Translations under genes and position numbers: made by a program
In this document: piece by piece, positions 21,180 to 52,645 of the stretch
Position numbering within the stretch: position 1 is the first letter of the stretch
Layout: each line of letters begins with the position of its first letter
Notes under the pieces: generated by a model
The model's database searches: none
Told to the model about the DNA's origin: nothing
The model's input: the letters and a program-made list of their open reading frames with translations, nothing else
Origin: Dimorphilus gyrociliatus
Taxonomy: Eukaryota; Animalia; Annelida
NCBI GenBank assembly: GCA_904063045.1
Contig: CAJFCJ010000010.1
Coordinates: forward strand, 434,001-498,000
Length of the DNA: 64,000 nucleotides
Reading direction: 5' to 3'

Positions 21180-23187
21180 TGGGGCTAGTCATTCAAATGT
21201 TAGCCGTTTCAAGTTTCTAAGGATGTAGAGACAGCAGGAAAATTAGAACGTCTGTCATTTTATAGACGTACAAATTGCTATATCCGGTAAATTCTTTGAA
21301 ACGTTTCTCCTTTTCTAAAACTTCCGCCAGGTCACGCAAACGATAAAAGACGCGTGTCTACATTATATGTTATAAAATGCTCTCTTTAGTTATGTATATA
21401 TACAGACATTCTCTATATTGTAAATTAAAGATCAGTGTGTAGAAGCACAGACTTTCACCTTGCAAACTGTGTAAAATGACGAAAAGCGAACTATTTCCGT
21501 ACGATTGAGATCGATATATTCCTTTCTCTCCACCCCCGCTTTTAATGACCGTTATATTTCCATGCTATTGTTCTTTGCTTCTCTTTGTTTACTATTTCCG
21601 TAAACTCTGCTATCATTCCTGGACATCAAACCGTTAATTATATAGTTAATAGAACCATAGGAAGGCGTGAAAAATTCGCCAACTAAATAATTAAGCTGGA
21701 TAATTGCATATGTTAAATGGAAGAAGAATTTCCACGTAGAACCCCTGCGTCTTTGAAACTTCAATCGCACGTGCTGTCTCTTTCTTCTCTCAAATTTTGT
21801 AGATTTAAATTCAGAAGTCCACGGAATGGACAACTTGGAATTTTTATTGACATAAGAAAGCGCGGCGCCACCCCCTCCTGGGTTCGGTTGACGGGAAATC
21901 ACCCATCGAATGGAAATAATAATGTTTTTTCTTTTTTTTTGAATTATACATACAAAAAGAGAAAAAAAAATAACAGATATTCAAGTTTTAAGCATTTATT
22001 TTCTCTTATCTGAACAAATTATAGAGCAGAATTTTTTGATAAGATCAGATTTTTTTTTGTTGTACTTATAAGATTGTTCAAAAAGTCATACTAGGCTGGT
22101 CTTATTATAACATACAAGCAATAGAAGGCGAAGGAAATTATAAAGAGAGAGAAAGAGAGAGAGAGGATTGAATTTTAAAGAAAAATTTTACTTTTATATT
22201 TAAATTATTTAAAATCGTTGTAAAAAAATATAAAGAAAGGGGAATTCATTAAGTGCACCTGTCCATATAGGTACTAAATACGATGAAAAAAAAGTTATCA
22301 CGTAAAAGGGTGATTTGTAAGTACTCAAGCCACAACACAGGTAGCGCTAAATATAAATGAAAACAAATTTCTTTCTAAGATTGAGAATTTTGATAAAAAA
22401 GTTTTTTCTCTTTCCTAAACGATTGTACCGTCAATTATTTTATATCTAAAGAAGGAGTTTCTCTATAACCATAGCCCTTTTTGGAAATTTTAAAACTATT
22501 TAAAGAAAATGAGGGATGGTCTATATTGAAGTAAAATGATGATTCTGTTATCATTCATTCAGTTGAATATTGTAGTTGTTTGTTTGGTTATAGGAAAAAC
22601 AAATATAATAGTTTAGTTATGTATAATATTGAACATTCTTAGAAATTGACATGGAACTATATCAAATTATCCAAGAGTTTTCATTCTATTATTTTAAAAA
22701 GTAATAATATGTCCTACTATGAACAATAATTTTATCGAAGCTTTCCCAAAAAAATTACTTGCTTATATATAGATATATAATAATACAAAATCTATTCAGA
22801 ATTAATCCCCCGTATGATTCATGGCAGACAATCTGAGTAGGCTCAAAATTTTTTATAAATGATATGCTTTAAGTTTACAAGAGTTTTAAATCAGTACTTA
22901 CATCTTATGCTCCATTTCATTAGCACCCTACGAATAATAATAATACTATTATTCTCCCAAATATCGATTCTTGGCTCCTACTTTCTTTATATGAGCATAG
23001 GTGAAAATAAGTTTAGAAAGTCGGTGTTTTAAGATTTAGTTTAGAGTTTCATTATTAAGAAACAGATAATCCGTTTAGGCTTGCTTGTAAGTTTTCCTTC
23101 GTTTCTATTTCTTCTGCAAGCTATAAAAGTAAACCTAATCGCTAATCAGTCAATCTAAACCAAGAAGTGATAGAAGCATTAACTACA

Positions 23188-23667
23188 ATGAATAAGTTAA
23201 TTTTTCAAATTATATGCTGCTCTCTCTTTGTCACACAAGTTTTATGTAAACCCTACGAGGGATTACTAAAACTGAATCTGGAAAAGACATCATCAACTTT
23301 GGGTAGGATTCAACAAAAAATACATTGTAGAAAGACTGCATCCGTTCTGGACCTATTAATTCCGAAATGCGAGTTCCCATGTTACAGAGAGTACGAAGAC
23401 TGCCAATTATTGAAACTAAGATGGCTTTTAATAGAAACAAGACTGATTGGAAAAAGTATGGAAAGCAATCACCGTCGGTTCATCGAGCATAATCTACTGG
23501 CAATAGAGAATGCGATTGAAAGAGTATTGAGAGGTGATCTAACGCCTTATCAATGTGATAATTTTGAAAGAAACTTGAATGACATTTATATGTCTTTCTC
23601 AGGGAAGAGACGACAATACTTGAACATTGAAAGAGGTATTAATATTCTCAGATCCTTAATGAAATGA
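23188..23667 (+). CDS. Secreted 159-aa predicted all-helical protein of unknown family (paralog A), intronless CDS
   Basis: ATG at 23188, signal peptide MNKLIFQIICCSLFVTQVLC and an upstream GTAAGT...ttctgcaAG intron (probably 5' UTR). Shares motifs with the 24592 ORF. Confidence 0.8.
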   Translation: MNKLIFQIICCSLFVTQVLCKPYEGLLKLNLEKTSSTLGRIQQKIHCRKTASVLDLLIPKCEFPCYREYEDCQLLKLRWLLIETRLIGKSMESNHRRFIEHNLLAIENAIERVLRGDLTPYQCDNFERNLNDIYMSFSGKRRQYLNIERGINILRSLMK

Positions 23668-24591
23668 AAGAGACATTTTACACTATTCTACTATTTGAAC
23701 AATTTTTTCCTGCCAAAAATTAATTTACGTCATTCTTATACTGTATATAACCAAATATATATTTTAATAACAACCGTTTATTTAAAAAATAATACATTTT
23801 CATAAAACCATGAGATATTAGTAAGCGGAGTAAAATATAAACACTTAGATTATTAGATTACTTAAACTTTATAATTTAATTAAAAGTTTGCAAAGATAAC
23901 ATAAACTAATTTATGTTATAGTATCAAAAAAGAAAAAAAAAAGCCTAAACTTTCTCTATTCATACAAACACGAATTTGAAAGACCCTATCGAAAAGTATA
24001 AAATCACAAAACAAAAAAAGAAATAAAAGCCGAAATGAACGTAATAAATCGCGAATATTTAGATATTGAATAACTATAAAAGAAACAAATTTAATTGATA
24101 TATATAATATATCAGAATATACATATATATCGATAAACTTATGTACAATTACCATACAAATATGATTTTGCTATCCTTTTACGCGTGTTCAAACATGTTA
24201 ATCTATAACTCTATTGTAAAATAAAATTGAAGTTTCCTATACAGAATGGTAAACTCTAATAAACAATTTGAAATGAGCATTTGTTTTCTTGACTTTTTAA
24301 TTATAAAGTATAAATAGTTTATCTTAGTTAATTGTTGTTTTATTAAGAAAAAAGTTTTTCCCACTTTTTAAAATTTCCTTTTCTAAACTCTTGCTTATGT
24401 AAAAATTAATTCGATAGTTTAAACAAACTCTATTGTCCTTTTACTGAATATAATAAATATATTGAAATGAACATAGAATTTTGTCTATTTTTTAAATTTG
24501 TATTTTCCACAGGAGTTTTTACTCTTTTGAGTTTGATTCGCTCTCTGAGTCACTTTTAACCATTGTATATACAGTACAAACAGTATATAAA

Positions 24592-25128
24592 ATGAAACAG
24601 AACTTATTTCTCAAGGAAATGGAACCGATAACTTTCAAGAACTTTTTACTTCTCGGTATAGTTTTAATAGAACTTGTTAAATCTGTTACTTCCAATAAGT
24701 GTCAATATATTAAGAATTATCAGCTTGATTCGCTGAAGCTGGAAACCAATTTGATAATAATAAAAAATAAGCTGGCCTTGTCTCCGACGATAGAGCACAT
24801 TGAAAGGCTAGTACCGAGATGCAAAATGAGGCGCACTGCCTATCGCGGAAACTTGAAACGACTGTTTGAAATGAGATGGCTGTTAAAGGAGTCTGTAGCA
24901 GTTAGTGAGAAAATTGACGACAAAGTTTATACTTTTTTTGGGCAGAGTTTGGCTCATTTGATATGTGATATCGAACGACAATTTAAGAGAACACACTTAC
25001 CTGAATATAAATGTAAGGAACTGAAAACTTCATCCCTCAGAGGGTCGATAAAAGTAACTGCTGGGAAACATTTTCTGCATAAAAATCTTAGCAAAGTAGC
25101 AAGGATGGCTTCAAAACTTAAAAAATAG
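24592..25128 (+). CDS. Secreted 169-178-aa predicted all-helical protein of unknown family (paralog B), intronless CDS
   Basis: ATG at 24592 or 24619, signal peptide FKNFLLLGIVLIELVKS and an upstream ttttccacAG acceptor. Motifs LVPRC, RWLLKE, IER and EYKC are shared with paralog A. Confidence 0.8.
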   Translation: MKQNLFLKEMEPITFKNFLLLGIVLIELVKSVTSNKCQYIKNYQLDSLKLETNLIIIKNKLALSPTIEHIERLVPRCKMRRTAYRGNLKRLFEMRWLLKESVAVSEKIDDKVYTFFGQSLAHLICDIERQFKRTHLPEYKCKELKTSSLRGSIKVTAGKHFLHKNLSKVARMASKLKK

Positions 25129-25833
25129 ACTATTATTTAAAACTATTTTTTGTAATATACTTGAATATATCAATACACTTGTAAATATAAATTATACACA
25201 GCGTCATAAACTATGAAAGATATTCTCTAAGAATTAATTAGATTTGTGTCTAAAAGTTATCTGTTTGTTACTGAAAGTGTTAACTTTATTATTAGACTTT
25301 AGGCAGGAGATGAAATACAATATTTCAGCAGTATTCTCTTCAAAGATATGTTAAAACCCCTATAACTAAAGTCTGTTGAAAATCATTTACGGTATAATCA
25401 GAAGAACTAAACTCCCTGTCTCTAAGAAAGTAATATTTTTCTATCGATTTTTCTTTGTGGTTTTAAGGTGAAAATGTCTTTTATCAACGTCTCTTCCTAC
25501 ATGGTTTTCTGATGGGGGAAAAAGCTTTTTTGCATGAATGAATAAACTTAGTAATCTCCTATGACATCTTTTTGTAGGCCGTAGTTAATATCTGCAAGGT
25601 TGTATTGATAAAAGGCATGCTCTATAAAAAAATTTTACCAATCCTTTAAAAAATTATCAAATATGATACTAAAATCCTAAACTGACCTAGGTGTTAAGAC
25701 TTTTTTCTTATGAAGATAACAAACAACTCTTGAAGTAATTTTATTTTACGTTATTTTAGCAATACTTGTATAAACCAGGTGATAACCGTTTTTTCTGAAC
25801 AGAAAAAGTTATATACATTTAATTTTTTTGAGT

Positions 25834-28800
25834 TTAATTATCTCCCGTCTGCTCATTGATAATTTCAAACACGTCTGTCCAATAATTTTCTCCAATATTT
25901 TCAGACGTGTTCAAATTTACTGCATATTTATTTTCAAAATGTTTATCTTCAGTAGAATCTAATAAGTTCGTTGGAGTATTGGAGTTTAAGACGTATAAAG
26001 TGGTTGAAATTTCCTGATTTGTTTGTCTCAGATTAATTGCTTCTGGCAACATATCTTCCATAAGATTTGGTGAATTTTCAGTTTCTTCATCAGTCATTAT
26101 ATCAAAGTTATAAGTTATTGAAGAAGCCGTTGCCTCCATGTCAGAGACACTATTCAGAGATTGATCATCGGAATCAGAATTATTATTGTCAGAGTCGTCT
26201 TCCTGGCATATGCATTCTTCCAGCTTGTTTAAGCATTCCCAACACATTTCTTGTTTACACAGAGAACAAATGACATGATTACATCCTTCTAATTTTTCTA
26301 TACCGATTAGGCAGTTGGGACATAATTTTCTATTCTTTGGATTACGCTTCATCCATTCTGTTAGTTTTGGATCTATTTCTTTAGATGAACTAAAGAAATC
26401 GCACGGTATACCTTCATGCCAGGTTCGATTGCAGTTTGTGCAGGTTTTGGTTTTACATCCTGGACATTTAAACATATTTCTAACAGTGGTTGTAGCAAAG
26501 ACATATTCGCAATCGGACGTTGGGCAGACTCGAATTAAATTTTTATTCATTGCAATGAATCTGTTCATTGATAGCTGAATGAAGCTAGCGACATCTTCAG
26601 TACTTATAACTTTTTTTATGTCTTGCATAAGTATTGGTTTATAGCACTTATCTTCTGCGCACAACAGGGGATATTCAAATGTCATAGATTTCGATGCACT
26701 AAGCTGATTTTTTAAACAAGAAACACAATAGAAATGTCCACATAATCTGAAAAAAATAAATATCAATTAGAACTTTCAATAATTTAATAGATAATATTAA
26801 ACATTACGTTAATTCCATTGTATTATCGCAAACTTCTGTCTCAAAGCAAATGCAACAATGTCGAGTATTTGTTAGAAAGTTACCAATAATAAATGCTGCA
26901 TTTGACAGGGCTTGCATATCTATCGACATTAGCAGTAATTGTCGGTGATTTTTTATTATTTTAATATTTCCAAGTTCCGCTCGTTTATTATAAATTACAT
27001 CATTCAAGTTTTCTCGAGCTTTCGCGAAAGCTATATGCAGATTTTTCATATAGGTCATAGGTGGGGCAATATCAAATGCATAAGTAACGAGGAATTCAGA
27101 CAATAAACCAATATCCATTTCGTGTTTCTTGAATGCTTGCCAAAGTATACTTTGAGATGAGTTCGTATAATTCATTGATTCACTAATTTTAGTTGTTTGT
27201 ATACACTTATCATTTAATGAGATAATCCGTTCAGTATCTGATTCCTCGTCGACAAATAAATCTACCCCAAAGTATGTTTGAATCTCTGTTTGAGTTGCAA
27301 TATTTTTCAAGTGACAACCTTTGAGAGTGTATTCTATGCCGCAAACATCTCCAGACAGTTTTCTAAATCCAAACTTATTAAACAAAGCATTTAGGCTCCT
27401 AGCATGAATTTGAATATTTCGTTCTTCATTAGTCTCCGTTATCGTTTGCTTGAATGCACTGTTTAATATAGGCAATTCGCACTGCTTAGAACTCTTCGCT
27501 AAATCATCCATTATGTAATTTTCTGCAGGAATATATAAGCTATCATAATCAATTTCGAAACTGCAGTTGTGTCTTATCCTTCCCACGACCTTGAAAAGCA
27601 ATGTAGCTTCATTGCCACAAGTATTAGATGGAAGGTTAGAAGTTTCTTCGAATGTAGATCTTATATAAAGCTTCTTTACTACAGTGGAGAGAAATTGCTT
27701 TGAACATTCTAGATCGCACAAATCGTTGAGTTGTAAATTGATATCACTATTATATAAACTTAAATAATGCGAAGACTTTTCCAAAAGTATATTATTATGA
27801 ACCAAAAATGCATCATCATGAACTAACAGCCTGTCGAACATTTGGGTTGTTAATAGCTTTAACTTTTCCTCTGGAATTTTTTGATAAGTATGATCGGACT
27901 GTATTCGACATTTTGAATTAAAAGTATTCTTTCCCTCGTTCAGTATTTCTCTTAATTGTTGTAAATAGTTTATGAAATGACTCAAAACAAAAATATCCAA
28001 AGGTCTATCAATTATAAACTTTAATTCAACATTTTGAGTTTGTTGATTAGTTTTTTTCAAAACTTTGAATTCAAATAATTCCGTGAAAAAGTATATATTT
28101 GATTTTAAGCAGTCATATTCCAATGAATTTAATTGGAAATAAACATAAGGATCATAACTAACCGATAACTTGTAAGAAGAAGCCTTGATGCGTACACGAT
28201 GATTTAGTGGAAAACTATGTTCCGTTGAAATTAGGCTTATTATCTCCTGTGGATTCTTGAAAAATAGTCTTGCTCTTAAAAGGGATTCAGAAGAGTTCAT
28301 TTCATAAATTTGGAAAAAAGAGTCCTTGTAAAAATGATTAAACATATCTTGCAAGCTGTCTGCCATTGAACAAATCTGACTGATTGATATTGGCTCCTGC
28401 TGTTGAACAGATTTAACCCATACAACTTCGACATGGTATTGAAAAGAAAATTCTTTTTTTATGTCGTCCTCTGATGGATAAATAAAAGAGTTAGAATCAA
28501 GCGAGTTGCTTAGTTCTAGGTAAACAACTCTTTCAGATACATTTTGAATCGAACCAAACACTCTGTGAACAAGAAGACCTGCACTCCAATCTTTTTCTTC
28601 ACCTTCAAAGCAAATTAAAAATGCCGTCTGTGTATCGTTTCTTGCTTTTAATTCTAAATCAACACAGGGACCGATGGCTCTTTCTTCACTATTTAGTAAG
28701 ACTTTTGATAAACCATACCATGTGTTAGATTGATTCAAATCGAGAAATTCGTATGAATTGACGGTCTGTAGAATTAACTTTCCCCAAAGATAAGGAAATT

Positions 28801-30159
28801 GTGTAGAGTTTCTATATCTACATACTCTGAAATCATCCACGGAAAATGCAAAAGAATTGTTAAGTTTCTGTATTAGTTCCTTTTTTATATCAATACTTTG
28901 AGTTTTTCTTGATAGTTGAAGAATCGTTTTATCAATGTAAATGAAAAAGCTCTTATAATTTTTACCCAAGCTTGGCTCAATTTCGAATCCTGGTTTAACG
29001 CACACTTCCAAAGGAGCTTTCTTGTGTGGATAATTTATTAATTTAGAATCAGTAAAAATTTCCTCTTCCGTCCATATTTGAACAACTGCATTAATTTTCT
29101 CAGAAATGGTCTCGGTATTTAGAATTACAGTAGAGTACACTACAAAGTATTCATTCTCAACATCACAGATGATGAAAGAGCTTAGTTGCCTTTTCTCTGC
29201 CTCGCCTGAGATATCTTGAAATTCATATTTCAATTCGCGTTGAATATTTTGAAAACTATTTAATTTTAATTCAAGAAGAAAACTTTGTGAAAAAGGACCA
29301 AATGCATATCGTTCTATATTTTCTTTCTTAACTGCTAAATCAAGGTCTCGTAGATAAGTTGAATCTTCTAAATCTAGCTTTATTACAAAAATTCGATCAG
29401 TTGAATGATAGTCTAGAATTGCAAGGGCATAGTCTGGAGGGCTCAGATAGTTCGTTTTGAAAACGCTTTCAGGATGCATCCGAAGATAATTTTTTGATGA
29501 ATTCATGTATCCAATTCTATCATATTTGGAATATACAACAAGATGCTCATGTAAGAACGTAATCAACGATTTCAAGGGAAGATCATCGTCATTTAACAAA
29601 CAATCGCAAAACAAATTCTTTAATTGGCTAACGTAAAAATCAATGTAAGCCAAATAATAATAATCAAGGCAATTTTTCTCACAAAATATCTTTCTCTCAT
29701 CTACTGGTAGAGCTAACCATTTATCAAAAACTTTGAGAAATGTATGTAAATCTCCATGATCAGAGAAGTACTCGCTTGCCGCCCGTGCGACATCTTTTTC
29801 GGTAGCTGTGGCTCTAGAGTGACAAAATACGCTTCTTGCGTACGTAATATAAACCGATGTTGCTAAAATTCTGTTATTTAAGGAGCATTTTGACCAGTGA
29901 ATTAAAAAGTTAATTATTATATCCAAATGGCTCTTTTTAAGATTAAACATATCTGTAGTTAAAAATTGATTCTGCTGAAAATGATCATTGGGATTGGAGC
30001 GGCTGATATCAAGGAAAATTTTCCTTAAATTTCGTCTTAGATCATTTTCATCGAATCTCTCATGTTTATTCATGTCTTCGTTAAGAGCTAAAAAAGGTTC
30101 GCAACAATTAAATTTTGATAAGAGATATTTGAGATTTAGAAAAACTCACATATATTCAT
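25834..30159 (-). CDS. RBR (RING-IBR-RING) E3 ligase with N-terminal DEAH-helicase HA2/OB-like remnant; lacks the helicase core (3 exons)
   Basis: Micro-exon ATG AAT ATA T|GTGAGT (30159-30150), a 3.3-kb exon, then a 61-nt intron (26807-26747) that completes RING1 CCICF...ELT|LCGHFYCVSC. IBR CPTSDC...CPGC...CTNC...HEGIPC and RING2 CPNC...GCNHVICSLC follow. The N-terminus has FSDHGDLHTFLKVFDKW and MHPESVF. Confidence 0.85.
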
Positions 30160-47027: not shown

Positions 47028-49709
47028 TCACCTTTGCTGCTGCATTTCACTTAGATATTTCAAAACACTTTGTATAAATCGTAGTCTTTGTGTTAAATTG
47101 TTCTTTTCTAGCAAATTAATCTTATATTGCTCTTCTAAAGGTAAGCTAGATATTAGCCACCATAGCCATATTGGGCCATCTTTTTCTTTAATCTCATCCT
47201 CTGTCAGACCTGGACTTGGAATATCGCCATTTTGCTGTGATATTTTGGAGCGTCGACTTTCACTCAAAGTTGCTAACCATTCTCTGCTCTGCTCTAATAC
47301 TTGATCGTGCAAATTCATTGTGTCTTGACGTTCAGCCTCGGGTATCGGCTCATCCTCTAGAATTCTAACGTTAGCAACATTGTAACCGTCAACGTATGAT
47401 CTATCCAATACTGTAAATCTTTTGGATCCTTGAGTTATAATTAGACTCCTTCCATCTGGTAAATACGTAACATCTTCAATGTACATTAGAGTTCCTATAT
47501 TCGCATACGAGTTATCAGACATTGGTCTAACCATACCGAAAGTTCTAGAACCATTTTCTATACACCTTCGAACCATAAGACGGTATCGAGGCTCAAAAAT
47601 GTGAAGTGGACAACGTACACCTGGAAAAGTAACAACGCATACAAATATGGGGACTTTCATCTCTCGGTCGCTGATTCCTGAAACGCACAGACTTTCGGTT
47701 AATAACTCGGAGTAGTGTTCGGAATATTGTTGAGGATAGAAATGCTTTACAATCAATTCGAAAATTTTATCGGTAGAGAATAGCCTATGCTTAAGCATTT
47801 GAACCAGTGAACTTTTGCATAGAGGACAATTGGGAGAGTGATCCAGAGATCTTTTGAGACATTCTTTACAAAACGTATGACCGCAAACAGTGGTAGACGG
47901 CTCAAACAACATCCTCCAACACAAAGAACAGTTAATTTCTTCCATCGGAAGTTGAGCGTCGTCTAACTTCCTTTTTATGTTGTCGATTGAATCCTCTGGA
48001 TCATGAATATGAGTTCTCTGTCGAATCATGGACGACTTTGCAACATTCGCCCTTAATGCTTCTTCCGGCGTAGAAGTTTTGATAAACTGGAACATTCGTT
48101 GAGAGATAGTTTCTCTTAAATCAGGGTTATCAGGATTTAAAGATAGACCAGTCATATATGATCTTATTGCTTCTTCAGTGTAGCCTAATTGTATAAGAAT
48201 CTCACCAAGATGGTAGTGAGCCTGAAGAAAATTTCCAAATATATAAAAATAATAAATTTTAGAAGCAAAACTTTTTAAAAAATTAAAATTATGAATATAT
48301 GAATAATTAATTAGCAAATTAAATTAACAAATATCATATAGTAGGGTAGAAGTAAAAAAAAAAGAGAAAAGAAAAAACTATAACACTTACTCTCCCTAGT
48401 GGAGAGTTTCGTAAAATATATTACTGTAATAATTAATAGAACTAGAATGCGTATTAGAGAAGGTAATAAGTGGAATTTGTAATAATGAGTCAATCTCCTT
48501 TTAGTGGTAATAATTTGTAATAAATAACCGTTTTTTCTATTAATATAACTTTAAACAATTGTTAAATTTCGATAAAAAATATAAAACAATCTAACCTAGT
48601 ATACTACTCAATTATATAGATATATATATACCTTAACTTTTCATTAATGGGCTAAATAGTAGTATACATTGACTATGTGTCCTTGAAATAGAAAACACGC
48701 TGGCAATGGTTTTATATATTATCGTTGAGTATGTCCTAGTTTCGAGTTCAACAAATAGGTCTCACTGGTAACATTATTTATTGTTATTTTCATTATCAAT
48801 ATCAGCCTATATCTTCCTTCTGATTTCTTTATTACTCATGTACATAGTTATTATAAAAAAAAATGGATAAGAAACCTAAATAAGAATAAAGAAACAATGA
48901 TAACTTGAGTGAGACCTACTTTTAAATAATGAATGTGTGTAGAATTAGAATGTTTTCTCTATAGTTTATTTACCTTAATCCAATTTGGCTTAAGATTAAT
49001 AACTCTTTCGGCATCTTTCAACGCCGAATCTCCTCGTCCATTTTCCATGTGTAATCGACTTCTCATTGACAAATAAATATGCTTTTCAAGTCCTTAACAG
49101 TGATAATTTACGAGTTATTTAATAATAATAATAACGATAATGTATAGATTATGTTTAAAGACTTTTTTTCTTACCTAATTTAAGCGACTCTTCTATAATC
49201 TCCAGACATTCATTATACATCTTATTAACTAGAAGGGCTTCAACTCTTTTCCTTCTATCCAATATATCTTTATATTCTGGTATCCATCCTCTTATTAACT
49301 TGTTTAAGAGAACATTTAAATTTCTATTAAAGTCTGGAGTAACAACATTTTGACAAATGTTACAGTTAACTATTCCTGATAAACAACTATTGCAGAAAGT
49401 ATGACCACAATCTACTGTAACAGGATCTATTAGGAGTCCATAACAGATCTCACAAGTTAACGTAGAAAATAGATCATTTGAAATTTGTTGAGCCATCTTG
49501 AGGTTTTCAACTAGACAGTCGATAAGCTTGGATAAATTTGAAGGTTTGAATTCTTTATGTTTGGAAGCTCGAAGGTATACTAAATAAGCTGATCCTAAGT
49601 CGCCATCGCTGGCCAAGTCGTCGGCCTTTAAAATCAATTGTTCAAAATTTTCATTTGTTTCAGGTTGTGAGTCTGTTAGCGTCGCAGTTTCAAATACGTT
49701 TCTCTCCAT
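47028..49709 (-). CDS. LONRF: LON peptidase N-terminal domain and RING finger protein (3 exons)
   Basis: RING1 CEICYGLLIDPVTVDCGHTFCNSC, TPR-like repeats (SALKDAERVINLKPNWIK|AHYHLG), RING2 CSLCWRMLFEPSTTVCGHTFCKEC and LON domain (PGVRCPLHIFEPRYRLMVRRC). Confidence 0.94.
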
Positions 49710-52645
49710 TCTTACCAAAATCAACTCGGTGGATAAGCGACCCGATTGTTAGGCAGAGTTTATTACTCAAGCTATGTATTTTGTTGTCGTCTGCTTTAAT
49801 CTGCCTTGACCTTGAAGAGATTTTAATTAAAAAATATAGATGGCGTTATAGTCTTTCTCACGTAATTAAAAATCAATTAAAACAGCCTTTGTTTAATAGG
49901 AAATAGCTTAATAATCAAATAGAATATTATAATAAACTATAGATTACAGATTGATTTTAGCCATACTAAAAAAGGGAGTTTTCTTATAAAGAGAAAAAAT
50001 CCTTTAATTTAGTTAAAAAGGTTACAATATCAATTTCCTATATATTAATATTATGAGCACAATACAAAACAGTATTTGTTAATAACTACAGATATATACG
50101 ATAACAAAACGGAAACAAAATCAAGATGGACTGAAAAATGAAATTGTTTAACGTATTTCTTAAGTTTCTACATTTATTGTCTATAGAATATAAGCACTTG
50201 TTTAAGTGCAATTACACATATACGCTATATACATTATGTATGAATTAAATATACTGTATATCTACAAAACGTAAAACATTATACATATATACACATATGC
50301 ATATACAGTATATATATATATATATATATATTTGAAGATGTATGTTTATCTTCTCATTTATATAATAATGAATAGTACATTTGAACTTTTCAATACTAAA
50401 TCAGTTAATATATGCAAACTCTTGTAATTTATCAGCTCAAATTGTCAAGAAAATAAATTCCTCCTAGTATTTTATAGTTGACACAGATACAGTGTTTACC
50501 TTGGAGGAATATGTAGGTTTATATATGTATACTGTATATACTGCGCATAATATCTACTATATATTTGTATATATAAATTAAACATACATCTATGTATATA
50601 TAATAATAATATAGTGTGGATACATTTGTATTTCCTCTTCCTATTCATCTCTTCTTTCTGATTAAATTGAATACTGTTCCTTATCAGTTACAAAAAAAAA
50701 CTAGTTTAATCAATCCTTTTTTATTCTGTCAACAATTACTTCTATGAAAGGACAAGTAAAATAAACCTTGCATTCTAGTAGTGTAATTTATCATACATTC
50801 CTATAATGGACTTTTATTTATATATTGCTCAAGTTACATAATTTTCTACATCTATTCAAATAACGAGTACACTATACAAAAAAATCTATAAGTACTTAAA
50901 CGAAATGAGCAAGTATTAATATTCAGCTAACCGTAACGTTAATTTTTCATTAAGCTAAACACTAACTAACTCTTTTCCATCTTAATTGGAACGATTATCG
51001 TGTTTCTCTTCAGTCTCATTGAGACCGTTGAAAGCAACTATTAAATTTCATTATAAATGATTGAAACTTTGGAAAAGAATTTTAAATAAATCGAATCTTT
51101 CTCTTCCTCTCTCTTTCTTTTTGTCTCTTTTTTTTTTTAAAAAAAACAAAAGCACCATATAAAAGGACAATTTTTTTTATTACGAGGCCAAAGAATACGA
51201 TTTAATGATATAAGTAAATAGAACTACGACATTTTTTATGATATTGAAGTATGCCAGGTGAAAATCTAGGTGTTACAAGATTTTAAAAGAAAGAAACTTC
51301 ATTTTCAAAGTTTTGACATAACATCAACTAGATTAATCTTACAGAGGATATTCAATGACTTTCCTATAAAATTGCTACAGTTACATAAACTATTCTACAA
51401 CGAGGAATTATAAATTTTAGATAATTTTATAATTTTTCCTATAAAAACCTCTATATGAAGCAAACAGCAAAAGTAAAAGAGTATAAGACTAAGAGTTATA
51501 TAATTATAAGCGTACGAATGTTGTAATAATGGAACTGCTGCGTTGTAATTTCTTCACTTAAGAAGCGAAGAATAAGTGAAAAATAATCTATATGAAATTC
51601 TTATTGTATACTCTCTTTTTTAATCATGCTCACAATTTTTATCTTCATCCCTCATAAATAAGTAATTTTATAAGATAAACCATTAGAAATACGTTCAAGT
51701 AGGTAAAGTACGAAAATAAAAATGGAAAATAATTCTATCTTATTAATTCTATAAGCTTTTGAATTTATAAAGAATTTTACTAAAAATACAAAAAACAAGC
51801 AAACATTTGAATTAACTAAGATTAGCATTAACTAAAGAGTATTTATTCCTCTATAGATATATAGTCTATATATCTATATATAAATAAACAAAATGAAAAT
51901 GATGAATATTAAAAAAGGAAAACAAAATATCCTTATTAAACTTACTTTACGTCTATTATAATTTGATTAAGATTTCCTATTTCACATAAAATTTCTTATA
52001 ATAGATGTGAAGCCCTTTTTTAGTGTTCTTTTTTTTTTTATTCTATTTGTTTTCTTCTGTTTTCGTGACTTTTTTTTTATTTATTTAGTTCCTCTTTCTA
52101 AATATAATCTATTTTTTTCCTTAGTAATCTAATAATCACTCGCAGAAAGAGATTACGATAATCTGACTCTAAAAAAATTATTTAATTCCCTTTACTCCTC
52201 CTCTCCTCCCAGTCTCACTATATCTCTATCTGTCTTTGTAAATAAATATATAAATATGTATATATATATCCCTATTTTCTGATATACAGTATATATATTA
52301 ATATATATATACTGTATATATATACAGGATATATGCAGTATAAAATATACTTGCATATATCCCACCCAATCGCCCTTCTTTTATTACACTCTTTCTCTTG
52401 CTTTTCTCAGTGAAAAGCTTTACTTTTAGTCGCCTTACAAAGAGCATGTCGTAAATCTAAATAAACGTATTTAATGCAACAACGATAACAGAGATTTGAG
52501 AACTTTCAAAGTGTGTTTTTTTTTTGGTTGATGTAATAAGTAAATAGATTAAGAGACATCGCTAATAGAAGTAGAAAGAACAATATTGCCAATGTTTAGC
52601 TTATGCACTCTATAAACACAGTATGTACAGTATACGCATATATAC

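What the first reader, a model, noticed from the sequence alone, without database searches (positions are those of the whole stretch)
23188..25128. Tandem pair of intronless secreted proteins with a candidate four-helix cytokine layout
Seen: two same-strand ORFs of 159 and 169-178 aa, each with a signal peptide and an upstream (probably 5' UTR) splice acceptor. They are diverged paralogs: LLIPKC/RLVPRC, LKLRWLLIET/FEMRWLLKES, AIENAIER/LICDIER and LTPYQC/LPEYKC, with two aligned Cys that could form a disulfide. By eye the amphipathic pattern reads helix, long loop, helix, short turn, helix, long loop, helix, the up-up-down-down layout of long-chain helical cytokines (IL-6/leptin/Unpaired/interferon-like). 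Established knowledge: such ligands diverge too fast for BLAST, and JAK/STAT ligands are poorly known in spiralians. Inference: possibly an unannotated invertebrate cytokine family.
Basis: partly seen in the sequence, partly recalled or inferred. Interest (0 to 1): 0.78.

Follow-up and report, generated by a model that had tools for sequence, protein, structure and literature searches.

The report
Orphan cytokine-like secreted protein trio, annelid
Two neighbouring unannotated single-exon genes of the tiny marine worm Dimorphilus gyrociliatus, plus a third copy elsewhere in its genome, encode small secreted proteins that are predicted with moderate confidence to fold like IL-6/interferon-type signalling proteins, a ligand class not yet known in worms and molluscs; transcription and receptor binding are unproven.

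Summary
Window 23188-23667 (159 aa) and 24619/24592-25128 (169/178 aa) are long, coding-like open frames with N-terminal signal-like segments, and they are diverged paralogs.

A third paralog lies on another contig (G000:C90). It is publicly annotated only as a truncated "unnamed protein product" of Dimorphilus gyrociliatus. The two window genes are absent from a 15-billion-protein collection.

An exhaustive profile search of 1.84 billion representative proteins found no relative outside this species. Pfam and PDB sequence searches found nothing.

AlphaFold2 models are of moderate confidence: pLDDT 70.6 and pTM 0.70 for ORF1, 63.8 and 0.63 for ORF2, both from a 3-sequence alignment. Both show helix A, a long loop, helix B, a short turn, helix C, a long loop and helix D. 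In an exhaustive comparison with 48,161 PDB chains, the top 22 matches of each model are all helical cytokines or hormones (Z up to 11.0 and 8.9, nearly full length).

So the four-helix cytokine layout is supported at the level of prediction.

The "upstream splice acceptor" is unsupported. ORF1 has a TATAAAAG box 66 nt upstream of its ATG.

The scan has already noted other cytokine-like pairs and gp130/Domeless-like receptors on other DNA of this genome.

The parts
23122..23129 (+). TATAAAAG, a canonical TATA-box word 66 nt upstream of the ORF1 ATG. It is the likely core promoter of a single-exon gene, and there is no upstream ATG within 150 nt.
   Evidence: Read from the sequence; not tested by reads.
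23188..23667 (+). ORF1, 159-aa precursor, single exon. The signal-like segment is about residues 1-17/20. The mature part is about 140 aa with 6 Cys if C20 is kept.
23188..23247 (+). ORF1 N-terminal signal-like segment (MNKLIFQIICCSLFVTQVLC). The cleavage point is uncertain. The only -3/-1-rule candidate lies after C20, but C20 aligns with a Cys conserved in all three paralogs.
   Evidence: heuristic only
23879..23884 (+). ATTAAA, the first poly(A)-signal-like word, 212 nt after the ORF1 stop.
   Evidence: Weak evidence in AT-rich DNA.
24566..24591 (+). TATA-like words upstream of ORF2: TATATAC at 24566 and TATATAAA at 24584. If either is the promoter, the first translated ATG is 24619, not 24592.
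   Evidence: inference
24619..25128 (+). ORF2, 169-aa precursor (178 aa from the alternative ATG at 24592), single exon. The signal-like segment is residues 1-25 and the mature part is 144 aa with 4 Cys.

Best explanation
ORF1 and ORF2 are a tandem pair of real single-exon genes. With a third copy on contig C90 they form a Dimorphilus-restricted, fast-evolving family of small, basic secreted proteins stapled by disulfides.

The mature ~140-160-aa chain most likely folds as an up-up-down-down four-helix bundle of the helical-cytokine type. Helix A is about residues 14-28. A long AB crossover loop carries a conserved Cys. Helix B (52-73) carries the RWxLxE motif. After a short BC turn comes helix C (79-97), ending in the conserved ER. 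A long CD crossover starts with the conserved YxC and contains a short extra helix. Helix D is 121-141.

Inferred mechanism: after secretion the bundle uses its helix faces to bring together class-I-cytokine-receptor-like membrane proteins, and so signals through STAT. Candidate receptors are the diverged gp130/Domeless-like genes that this scan noted elsewhere in the genome.

Shown: the open frames, the paralogy, the restriction to this species in current databases, and the predicted fold class. Inferred: secretion, disulfides, receptor binding and signalling.
For: - Long coding-like frames with signal-like N-termini.
- Three paralogs at about 25% identity keep open frames, three aligned Cys and the RW-L-E, ER and Y-C motifs, which argues for purifying selection on a folded protein.
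- AF2 model of ORF1: pLDDT 70.6, pTM 0.70, four long helices, AB and CD loops of about 23 residues and a 5-residue BC turn. ORF2 shows the same pattern.
- VIA-align against 48,161 chains, ORF1: ranks 1-22 are all helical cytokines or hormones, Z 11.0-7.3, with 103-136 of 142 residues aligned across all helices. The first non-cytokine bundles score Z 7.2 or less and cover only residues ~34/47-142.
- VIA-align, ORF2: ranks 1-22 are again all cytokines, Z 8.9-5.8.
- Foldseek, ORF1: IL-6, IL-27, IFN and leptin lead the list.
- By helix order, all conserved Cys sit at one pole of such a bundle: the N-terminus, just before helix B, the end of helix C, and the start of the CD loop. That is where they could pair (inference).
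- STAT DNA-binding domain genes are present.
- Literature: an IL-6-like ligand is still missing in molluscs and most invertebrates, although receptor, JAK and STAT are present (PMC13203501).
Against: - The models rest on a 3-sequence alignment and moderate confidence. Four of the five ORF2 models have pLDDT below 40, and Foldseek on ORF2 is mixed with low probabilities.
- All Foldseek E-values are 0.12 or worse.
- By the tool's own note, Z 8-11 is within the range that helical models can reach by a common arrangement.
- There is no sequence or profile similarity to any cytokine family.
- JAK-specific domains and an IL6Ra-type binding domain were not found in six-frame searches. The one SH2_1 hit is a Src-like kinase.
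- No receptor was examined here.
- Disulfide geometry could not be checked, because model coordinates are not exposed.
Confidence: 0.45

Rival explanations
1. The genes are real and the proteins secreted and helical, but they are not receptor ligands. They would be a lineage-specific orphan family with another extracellular role, for example antimicrobial or other basic effector, matrix, mucus or egg-envelope component, or carrier. On this view the cytokine-like model is AlphaFold's default answer for a small secreted helical protein with long loops.
For: - There are no homologs outside the species.
- The composition is strongly basic: K+R 25-34 against D+E 14-17.
- The alignment is shallow and the model confidence moderate.
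- Foldseek on ORF2 is mixed.
- No receptor or JAK link was found.
Against: - Two separately predicted paralogs both give only cytokines in the top 22 of 48,161 chains, with full-length coverage.
- The loop-length pattern (long, short, long) and the Cys positions fit the crossover topology.
- From general knowledge, few non-ligand families have the up-up-down-down connectivity.
Confidence: 0.35
2. The ORFs are not functional genes: either chance or decaying open frames, or never-expressed duplicates.
For: - The two window ORFs are not in the public gene set.
- No RNA-run holder was listed.
Against: - The frames are far longer than in shuffles (210 codons against a maximum of 143).
- Codon bias is frame-specific and GC is raised relative to the spacer.
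- Three copies at about 25% identity all keep open frames, signal-like starts and aligned Cys.
- The third copy is publicly annotated.
- ORF1 has a canonical TATA box at -66.
Confidence: 0.08
3. They are neuropeptide or prohormone precursors that are cut at basic sites into short peptides, not folded-bundle ligands.
For: ORF1 has a G-K-R-R motif (mature residues 122-125), which looks like an amidation and dibasic cleavage site, and the C90 copy has RR at the same column.
Against: - The site is not kept in ORF2, which has GKHF there.
- It lies at the start of predicted helix D.
- Conservation (Cys, RW-L-E, ER, Y-C) is spread over the whole chain rather than confined to short repeated peptides flanked by dibasic sites.
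Confidence: 0.05

Closest known systems
gp130-family long-chain class I helical cytokines (IL-6, IL-11, CNTF, CLCF1, LIF, viral IL-6)
   Same: - Size of about 140-180 aa, secreted.
- Predicted four-helix up-up-down-down bundle with long AB and CD loops and a mini-helix in the CD loop.
- Structural matches: IL-11 Z 10.6, IL-6 Z 9.9, CLCF1 Z 9.8, CNTF Z 8.8, vIL-6 Z 8.7-8.9.
- Foldseek ranks IL-6 first for ORF1.
   Different: - No sequence or profile similarity.
- The Cys pattern differs. From my own knowledge, IL-6 and G-CSF have two local disulfides in and around the AB region. Here the conserved Cys lie at the N-terminus, in the AB loop, at the end of helix C and at the start of the CD loop.
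- The helices are shorter (15-22 residues).
- The genes are intronless.
- The receptor is unknown.
Type I interferons (fish IFNa/IFNd, mouse IFN-beta)
   Same: - They are the top structural matches for ORF1: carp IFNa Z 11.0, IFN-beta Z 10.7, croaker IFNd Z 10.6.
- An extra helix sits in the second crossover.
- Both are intronless, as mammalian type I IFN genes are (my own knowledge).
- The Cys placement (N-terminus with the end of helix C, AB loop with the CD region) recalls the IFN-alpha C1-C98 / C29-C138 scheme (my own knowledge; not tested).
   Different: - The Z values tie with class I cytokines within 1 unit, so the two classes cannot be told apart.
- No sequence similarity.
- Type I IFNs and their class II receptors are regarded as vertebrate-specific.
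- Disulfide pairing was not testable here.
Leptin / growth hormone / prolactin-placental lactogen hormones
   Same: Same predicted bundle topology and size: placental lactogen Z 10.1, leptin Z 9.6, GH Z 9.4.
   Different: No sequence similarity and a different Cys pattern. Nothing here separates a hormone role from an immune role.
Drosophila Unpaired (Upd1-3), ligands of Domeless
   Same: They are the only established protostome helical JAK/STAT ligands, and like this family they diverge fast and are restricted to one lineage (PMC13203501).
   Different: From my own knowledge, Upd proteins are much longer and are insect-restricted. No solved structure was available to compare, and no similarity was detected in Pfam.
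Other candidate cytokine-like pairs that this scan noted in the same genome (s1-080645, s1-080305, s1-081722, s1-082011)
   Same: Same species, small secreted orphan proteins, mostly intronless, read as IL-6/G-CSF-like four-helix proteins.
   Different: They lie on other contigs. A genome-wide six-frame HMM search with this family's profile found only its own three members, so any kinship is below sequence detection. I did not see their sequences. s1-082011 might be the C90 copy; I did not check.

Membership tests
Helical cytokine superfamily (class I long-chain / type I IFN fold) | Secreted: N-terminal signal peptide | tested here: met
   All three paralogs have a hydrophobic N-terminal 10-mer (mean KD 2.5-2.9) followed by -3/-1 small-residue sites. 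This is a heuristic, not SignalP.
Helical cytokine superfamily (class I long-chain / type I IFN fold) | Four-helix bundle with up-up-down-down connectivity (long AB and CD crossover loops, short BC turn) | tested here: met
   Met on predicted models only. ORF1 has pLDDT 70.6 and pTM 0.70; ORF2 has 63.8 and 0.63. The top 22 of 48,161 PDB chains are all helical cytokines for both models, at near full length. Confidence is moderate and the alignment has 3 sequences.
Helical cytokine superfamily (class I long-chain / type I IFN fold) | Binds the cytokine-binding module of a class I or class II cytokine receptor | not tested
   No receptor sequence was recovered here. The IL6Ra-bind domain search found nothing. 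The one weak Lep_receptor_Ig hit is a small Ig-domain membrane protein. Spliced receptor models may not be joined, so no co-fold was sent.
Helical cytokine superfamily (class I long-chain / type I IFN fold) | Downstream JAK/STAT pathway present in the organism | tested here: inconclusive
   STAT_bind was found at two loci, the best at E 3.8e-40. Jak1_Phl and JAK FERM_F2 were not found. The SH2_1 hit is a Src-like kinase. Exon-by-exon searching can miss diverged domains.
IL-6/G-CSF family (Pfam IL6 and relatives) | Sequence-profile match to the family | tested here: not met
   No cytokine family appears in Pfam at E up to 10 for any of the three proteins. The profile found no PDB sequence at E up to 10.
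IL-6/G-CSF family (Pfam IL6 and relatives) | Two local disulfides in the AB-loop region (my own knowledge) | tested here: not met
   The conserved Cys lie at the N-terminus, in the AB loop, at the end of helix C (2 of 3 members) and at the start of the CD loop. This is a different pattern. The pairing itself was not testable.
Type I interferon | Sequence-profile match (Pfam Interferon) and signalling through class II receptors | tested here: not met
   There is no Pfam or PDB sequence match. The receptor side was not tested. The structural Z of 10.6-11.0 ties with class I cytokines.
Expressed gene | Transcript evidence | tested here: inconclusive

The most novel reading that the evidence does not exclude
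The three proteins are genuine annelid helical cytokines that signal through the diverged gp130/Domeless-like receptors encoded elsewhere in the Dimorphilus genome. Together with the other orphan pairs noted by the scan, they would be the first ligand repertoire of a spiralian JAK/STAT-type cytokine system. That would fill the 'receptor-JAK-STAT without ligand' gap reported for Lophotrochozoa, and would suggest that helical cytokines date back to the bilaterian ancestor but evolve too fast for sequence searches to see.
Probability: 0.3. Interest if true: 0.8.

Novelty: new variant of a known kind. Interest (0 to 1): 0.55.

Why it matters
Receptor, JAK and STAT components are reported from molluscs and other invertebrates, but no IL-6-like ligand is known outside vertebrates apart from the insect Upd proteins (PMC13203501).

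A small, experimentally tractable annelid with unannotated genes for cytokine-fold proteins would make that open question directly testable. The steps are to express the protein, test binding to the worm's own receptor-like proteins, and read out STAT.

It also shows that compact intronless secreted genes are being missed by standard annotation of this genome. Two of the three members are absent from the public protein set, and the third is truncated so that it lacks its signal peptide.

Tried and rejected
**Sequence and shape searches that found nothing**
- Word-index protein search with ORF1: 18 candidates, none at E 1 or better.
- Exhaustive profile search of 1.84e9 representatives: only the family's own C90 member (P0001) and a spurious 1059-aa Cys-rich repeat protein that matched in 16 short stretches.
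- Pfam at E up to 10: only sub-threshold noise, Med15_fungi and RVE6.
- PDB sequence-profile search: nothing.
- ESM Atlas by shape: only bacterial membrane or unrelated helical clusters at TM 0.53 or less, mostly partial.
- ESM Atlas by features: best score 0.77, to a hepatitis core antigen, which is noise.

**Weak own-genome hits rejected**
- C46 has stops inside the match.
- C55 is a polycystin-like membrane gene.

**Exact-sequence look-ups**
- Encoding contigs for ORF1, both ORF2 forms and P0001: nothing on record.

**Reads**
- Two local scripts read window stretches that include them, for shuffling and a poly(A)-word regex only.

**Pathway and receptor searches**
- JAK search by Jak1_Phl, FERM_F2 and SH2_1: nothing, or a Src-like kinase.
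- Receptor search by IL6Ra-bind and Lep_receptor_Ig: nothing, or a basigin-like Ig protein.
- For that reason no complex-prediction job was sent.

**Local analyses that added little**
- Promoter-word scan (STAT, NF-kB, ISRE, AP-1, GATA) of the three upstream regions: nothing survives multiple testing. ISRE-like GAAANNGAAA occurs 2 times against 0.24 expected, reached by 7 of 300 shuffles.
- Hydrophobic-moment scan of the 3-sequence alignment: clear amphipathic signal only for helices C and D, so it adds little.

**Other**
- The neuropeptide-precursor reading was considered and ranked low (see the rival explanations).
- No spliced model was needed, since the genes are single-exon, so there was no joined step.
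Full report
**What is there.** The window is AT-rich animal DNA, about 28% GC around the finding. On the + strand lie two open frames: 23188-23667 (159 aa from the first ATG) and 24592-25128 (178 aa, or 169 aa from the ATG at 24619).

In DNA this AT-rich such frames are not expected by chance. The longest open frame in 22000-26000 is 210 codons, against a mean of 82 and a maximum of 143 in 500 shuffles. A codon model trained on long exons of the same window scores positive only in the proposed frame (+0.07 to +0.11 bits per codon). The other five frames score -0.14 to -0.79, and the spacer about -0.6 to -0.7. GC rises from 0.23 in the spacer to 0.35 in the ORFs.

Each product begins with a hydrophobic stretch followed by small-residue cleavage candidates, which fits a signal peptide. 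No dedicated predictor was available.

**Paralogy and family size.** BLASTP aligns the two products at 26% identity over 90 residues, E 1e-5.

Six-frame searches of the whole 77.9-Mb assembly, with either protein or with a profile, find exactly one further member: G000:C90, L002:1429-1971, 180 aa from the ATG that precedes its signal-like segment. Two weaker hits are spurious.

The three proteins share about 25% identity. All three have aligned Cys near the mature N-terminus, in "P-x-C" before helix B, and in "Y-x-C". They also share an invariant R-W-x-L-x-E and E-R. A fourth Cys, in helix C, is shared by ORF2 and the C90 copy.

Open frames, signal-like starts and Cys kept at this divergence argue for selection on a folded secreted protein. 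With three copies only, this is not a repeat or a transposon.

**Organism and annotation.** The C90 member is in public databases as CAD5126822.1, "unnamed protein product [Dimorphilus gyrociliatus]". That model has 144 aa and starts at an internal Met, so it lacks the signal peptide. Neither window protein is in the 15-billion-sequence collection in any tested form, and neither appeared in the exhaustive search. Both therefore appear to be unannotated.

**Gene structure.** Upstream of ORF1 the pyrimidine run ends in AAG, a poor acceptor, and is followed at once by TATAAAAG (23122-23129). That word lies 66 nt before the ATG, with no intervening ATG. ORF2 is preceded by TATATAC and TATATAAA at 24566-24591. 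If these are the promoter, translation starts at 24619 and gives a conventional signal peptide. A decent acceptor-like word (TTTTCCACAG, about 24503-24512) does exist upstream of ORF2, so a spliced 5'UTR cannot be excluded there. The simplest reading is two single-exon genes, each with its own TATA promoter. No spliced model was needed.

**Relatives elsewhere.**
- Word-index search: none.
- Profile search of 1.84 billion representatives: only the family's own member and a spurious Cys-repeat protein.
- Pfam at E up to 10: no cytokine family or any other credible family.
- PDB sequences with the profile: none.
- ESM Atlas by features and by shape: noise.

In current data the family is restricted to Dimorphilus.

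**Fold.** AlphaFold2 on mature ORF1, with the 3-sequence alignment, gives pLDDT 70.6 and pTM 0.70. The helices are 14-28, a short one at 37-40, 52-73, 79-97, 107-117 and 121-141. That makes two crossover-length loops of about 23 residues (AB and CD) and a 5-residue BC turn. Mature ORF2 gives the same pattern at pLDDT 63.8 and pTM 0.63, but only one of its five models is usable.

VIA-align compared each model with all 48,161 PDB representatives.
- For ORF1, ranks 1-22 are exclusively helical cytokines or hormones. The leaders are carp IFNa Z 11.0, IFN-beta 10.7, croaker IFNd 10.6, IL-11 10.6, placental lactogen 10.1, IL-6 9.9, CLCF1 9.8, leptin 9.6 and GH 9.4. CNTF, vIL-6, LIF, IL-31, IL-7, IL-23p19, IL-27p28, IL-12p35 and IL-22 follow. 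Between 103 and 136 of 142 residues are aligned, across all helices.
- The first non-cytokine entries score Z 7.2 or less and cover only the last three helices.
- For ORF2, ranks 1-22 are again all cytokines, Z 8.9-5.8.

Foldseek ranks IL-6 first for ORF1 (prob 0.98, TM 0.54), but with E 0.12. For ORF2 it gives a mixed, low-probability list.

The tool notes that Z below about 13 can arise from common helical arrangements. The argument therefore rests on the exclusive, full-length enrichment of one topology in two models, not on the Z values themselves. The predicted models have the helical-cytokine connectivity. Whether the models are right is the main uncertainty. I put the fold at roughly 0.6-0.65.

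The data cannot separate the IL-6/leptin/GH class from the type I interferon class, because their Z values tie within 1 unit.

**Cysteines.** In an up-up-down-down bundle four places lie at the same pole: the N-terminus of A, the stretch just before B, the C-terminal end of C and the start of the CD loop. All conserved Cys sit exactly there. This is consistent with two disulfides stapling that pole. The pattern differs from IL-6/G-CSF and loosely recalls IFN-alpha (my own knowledge; untested).

**Pathway context.** STAT DNA-binding domains are encoded at two loci. JAK-specific Pfam domains and IL6Ra-bind were not found exon by exon. The SH2_1 hit is Src-like, and the weak Lep_receptor_Ig hit is a small Ig-domain membrane protein. 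These blanks are weak evidence.

Earlier notes of this scan report five diverged gp130/Domeless-like receptor genes and several other cytokine-like orphan pairs on other contigs of this genome. I did not test those notes. My profile search shows those other pairs are not detectably related in sequence to this trio.

A 2026 survey states that no IL-6-like ligand has been found in molluscs and most invertebrates, despite receptor, JAK and STAT being present (PMC13203501).

**Transcription.** Not established. The run search, asked for RNA, listed a single holder of unknown kind (60 M letters, 2017, 52% of the sampled words) and no run on record as RNA. I worked beside those places afterwards and sent none of their letters to any search tool.

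**Verdict.** The structural interpretation is supported by prediction at moderate confidence. The functional interpretation, a cytokine and JAK/STAT ligand, remains an inference.

My best explanation is a Dimorphilus-specific family of secreted ligands with a helical-cytokine fold (0.45). The main rival is a secreted helical orphan family with another role, in which case the model would be over-read (0.35). Non-genes (0.08) and prohormone precursors (0.05) are unlikely.

It is a new variant of a known kind. Interest is moderate to high because it makes the missing spiralian helical-cytokine ligand testable. It is tempered by shallow-alignment models, the lack of expression data and the lack of any receptor link.

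Noticed in passing
window 25834-30073 (-): Directly downstream, on the opposite strand, a 1089-aa open frame with no Pfam match (26804-30073) is followed by a 310-aa frame with two IBR domains (25834-26766; IBR E 1.3e-16). Together they are probably one RBR-type E3 ligase gene with a very large orphan N-terminal region.
   Followed up: partly
L002:1399-1971 (G000:C90:90486-91058): The public model of the third paralog (CAD5126822.1, 144 aa) starts at an internal Met and so lacks the signal-like N-terminus. The open frame offers ATGs 36 and 46 codons further upstream.
   Followed up: yes
window 23102-23111: An ISRE/IRF-like tandem GAAA word (GAAATAGAAA on the minus strand) sits about 10 nt upstream of the ORF1 TATA box. 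A second GAAANNGAAA lies 245 nt upstream of ORF2. That is 2 observed against 0.24 expected, which is not significant after testing nine motifs.
   Followed up: partly
window 47028-48317 (-) and 49155-49724 (-): A TPR + RING + LON substrate-binding (LONRF-like) gene. The exon frame further along the window at 49155-49724 looks like a second RING.
   Followed up: no
L016/L017 (G000:C11:186546-188155, -): A small membrane protein with Ig-like domains and a Glu inside its transmembrane helix (…LGICAEVFLL…), which resembles basigin/neuroplastin. It came up as the only weak Lep_receptor_Ig hit and is not a cytokine receptor.
   Followed up: partly
window 23917-23956: An A-rich low-complexity stretch in the spacer between the two genes tripped the read tool's filter.
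   Followed up: no
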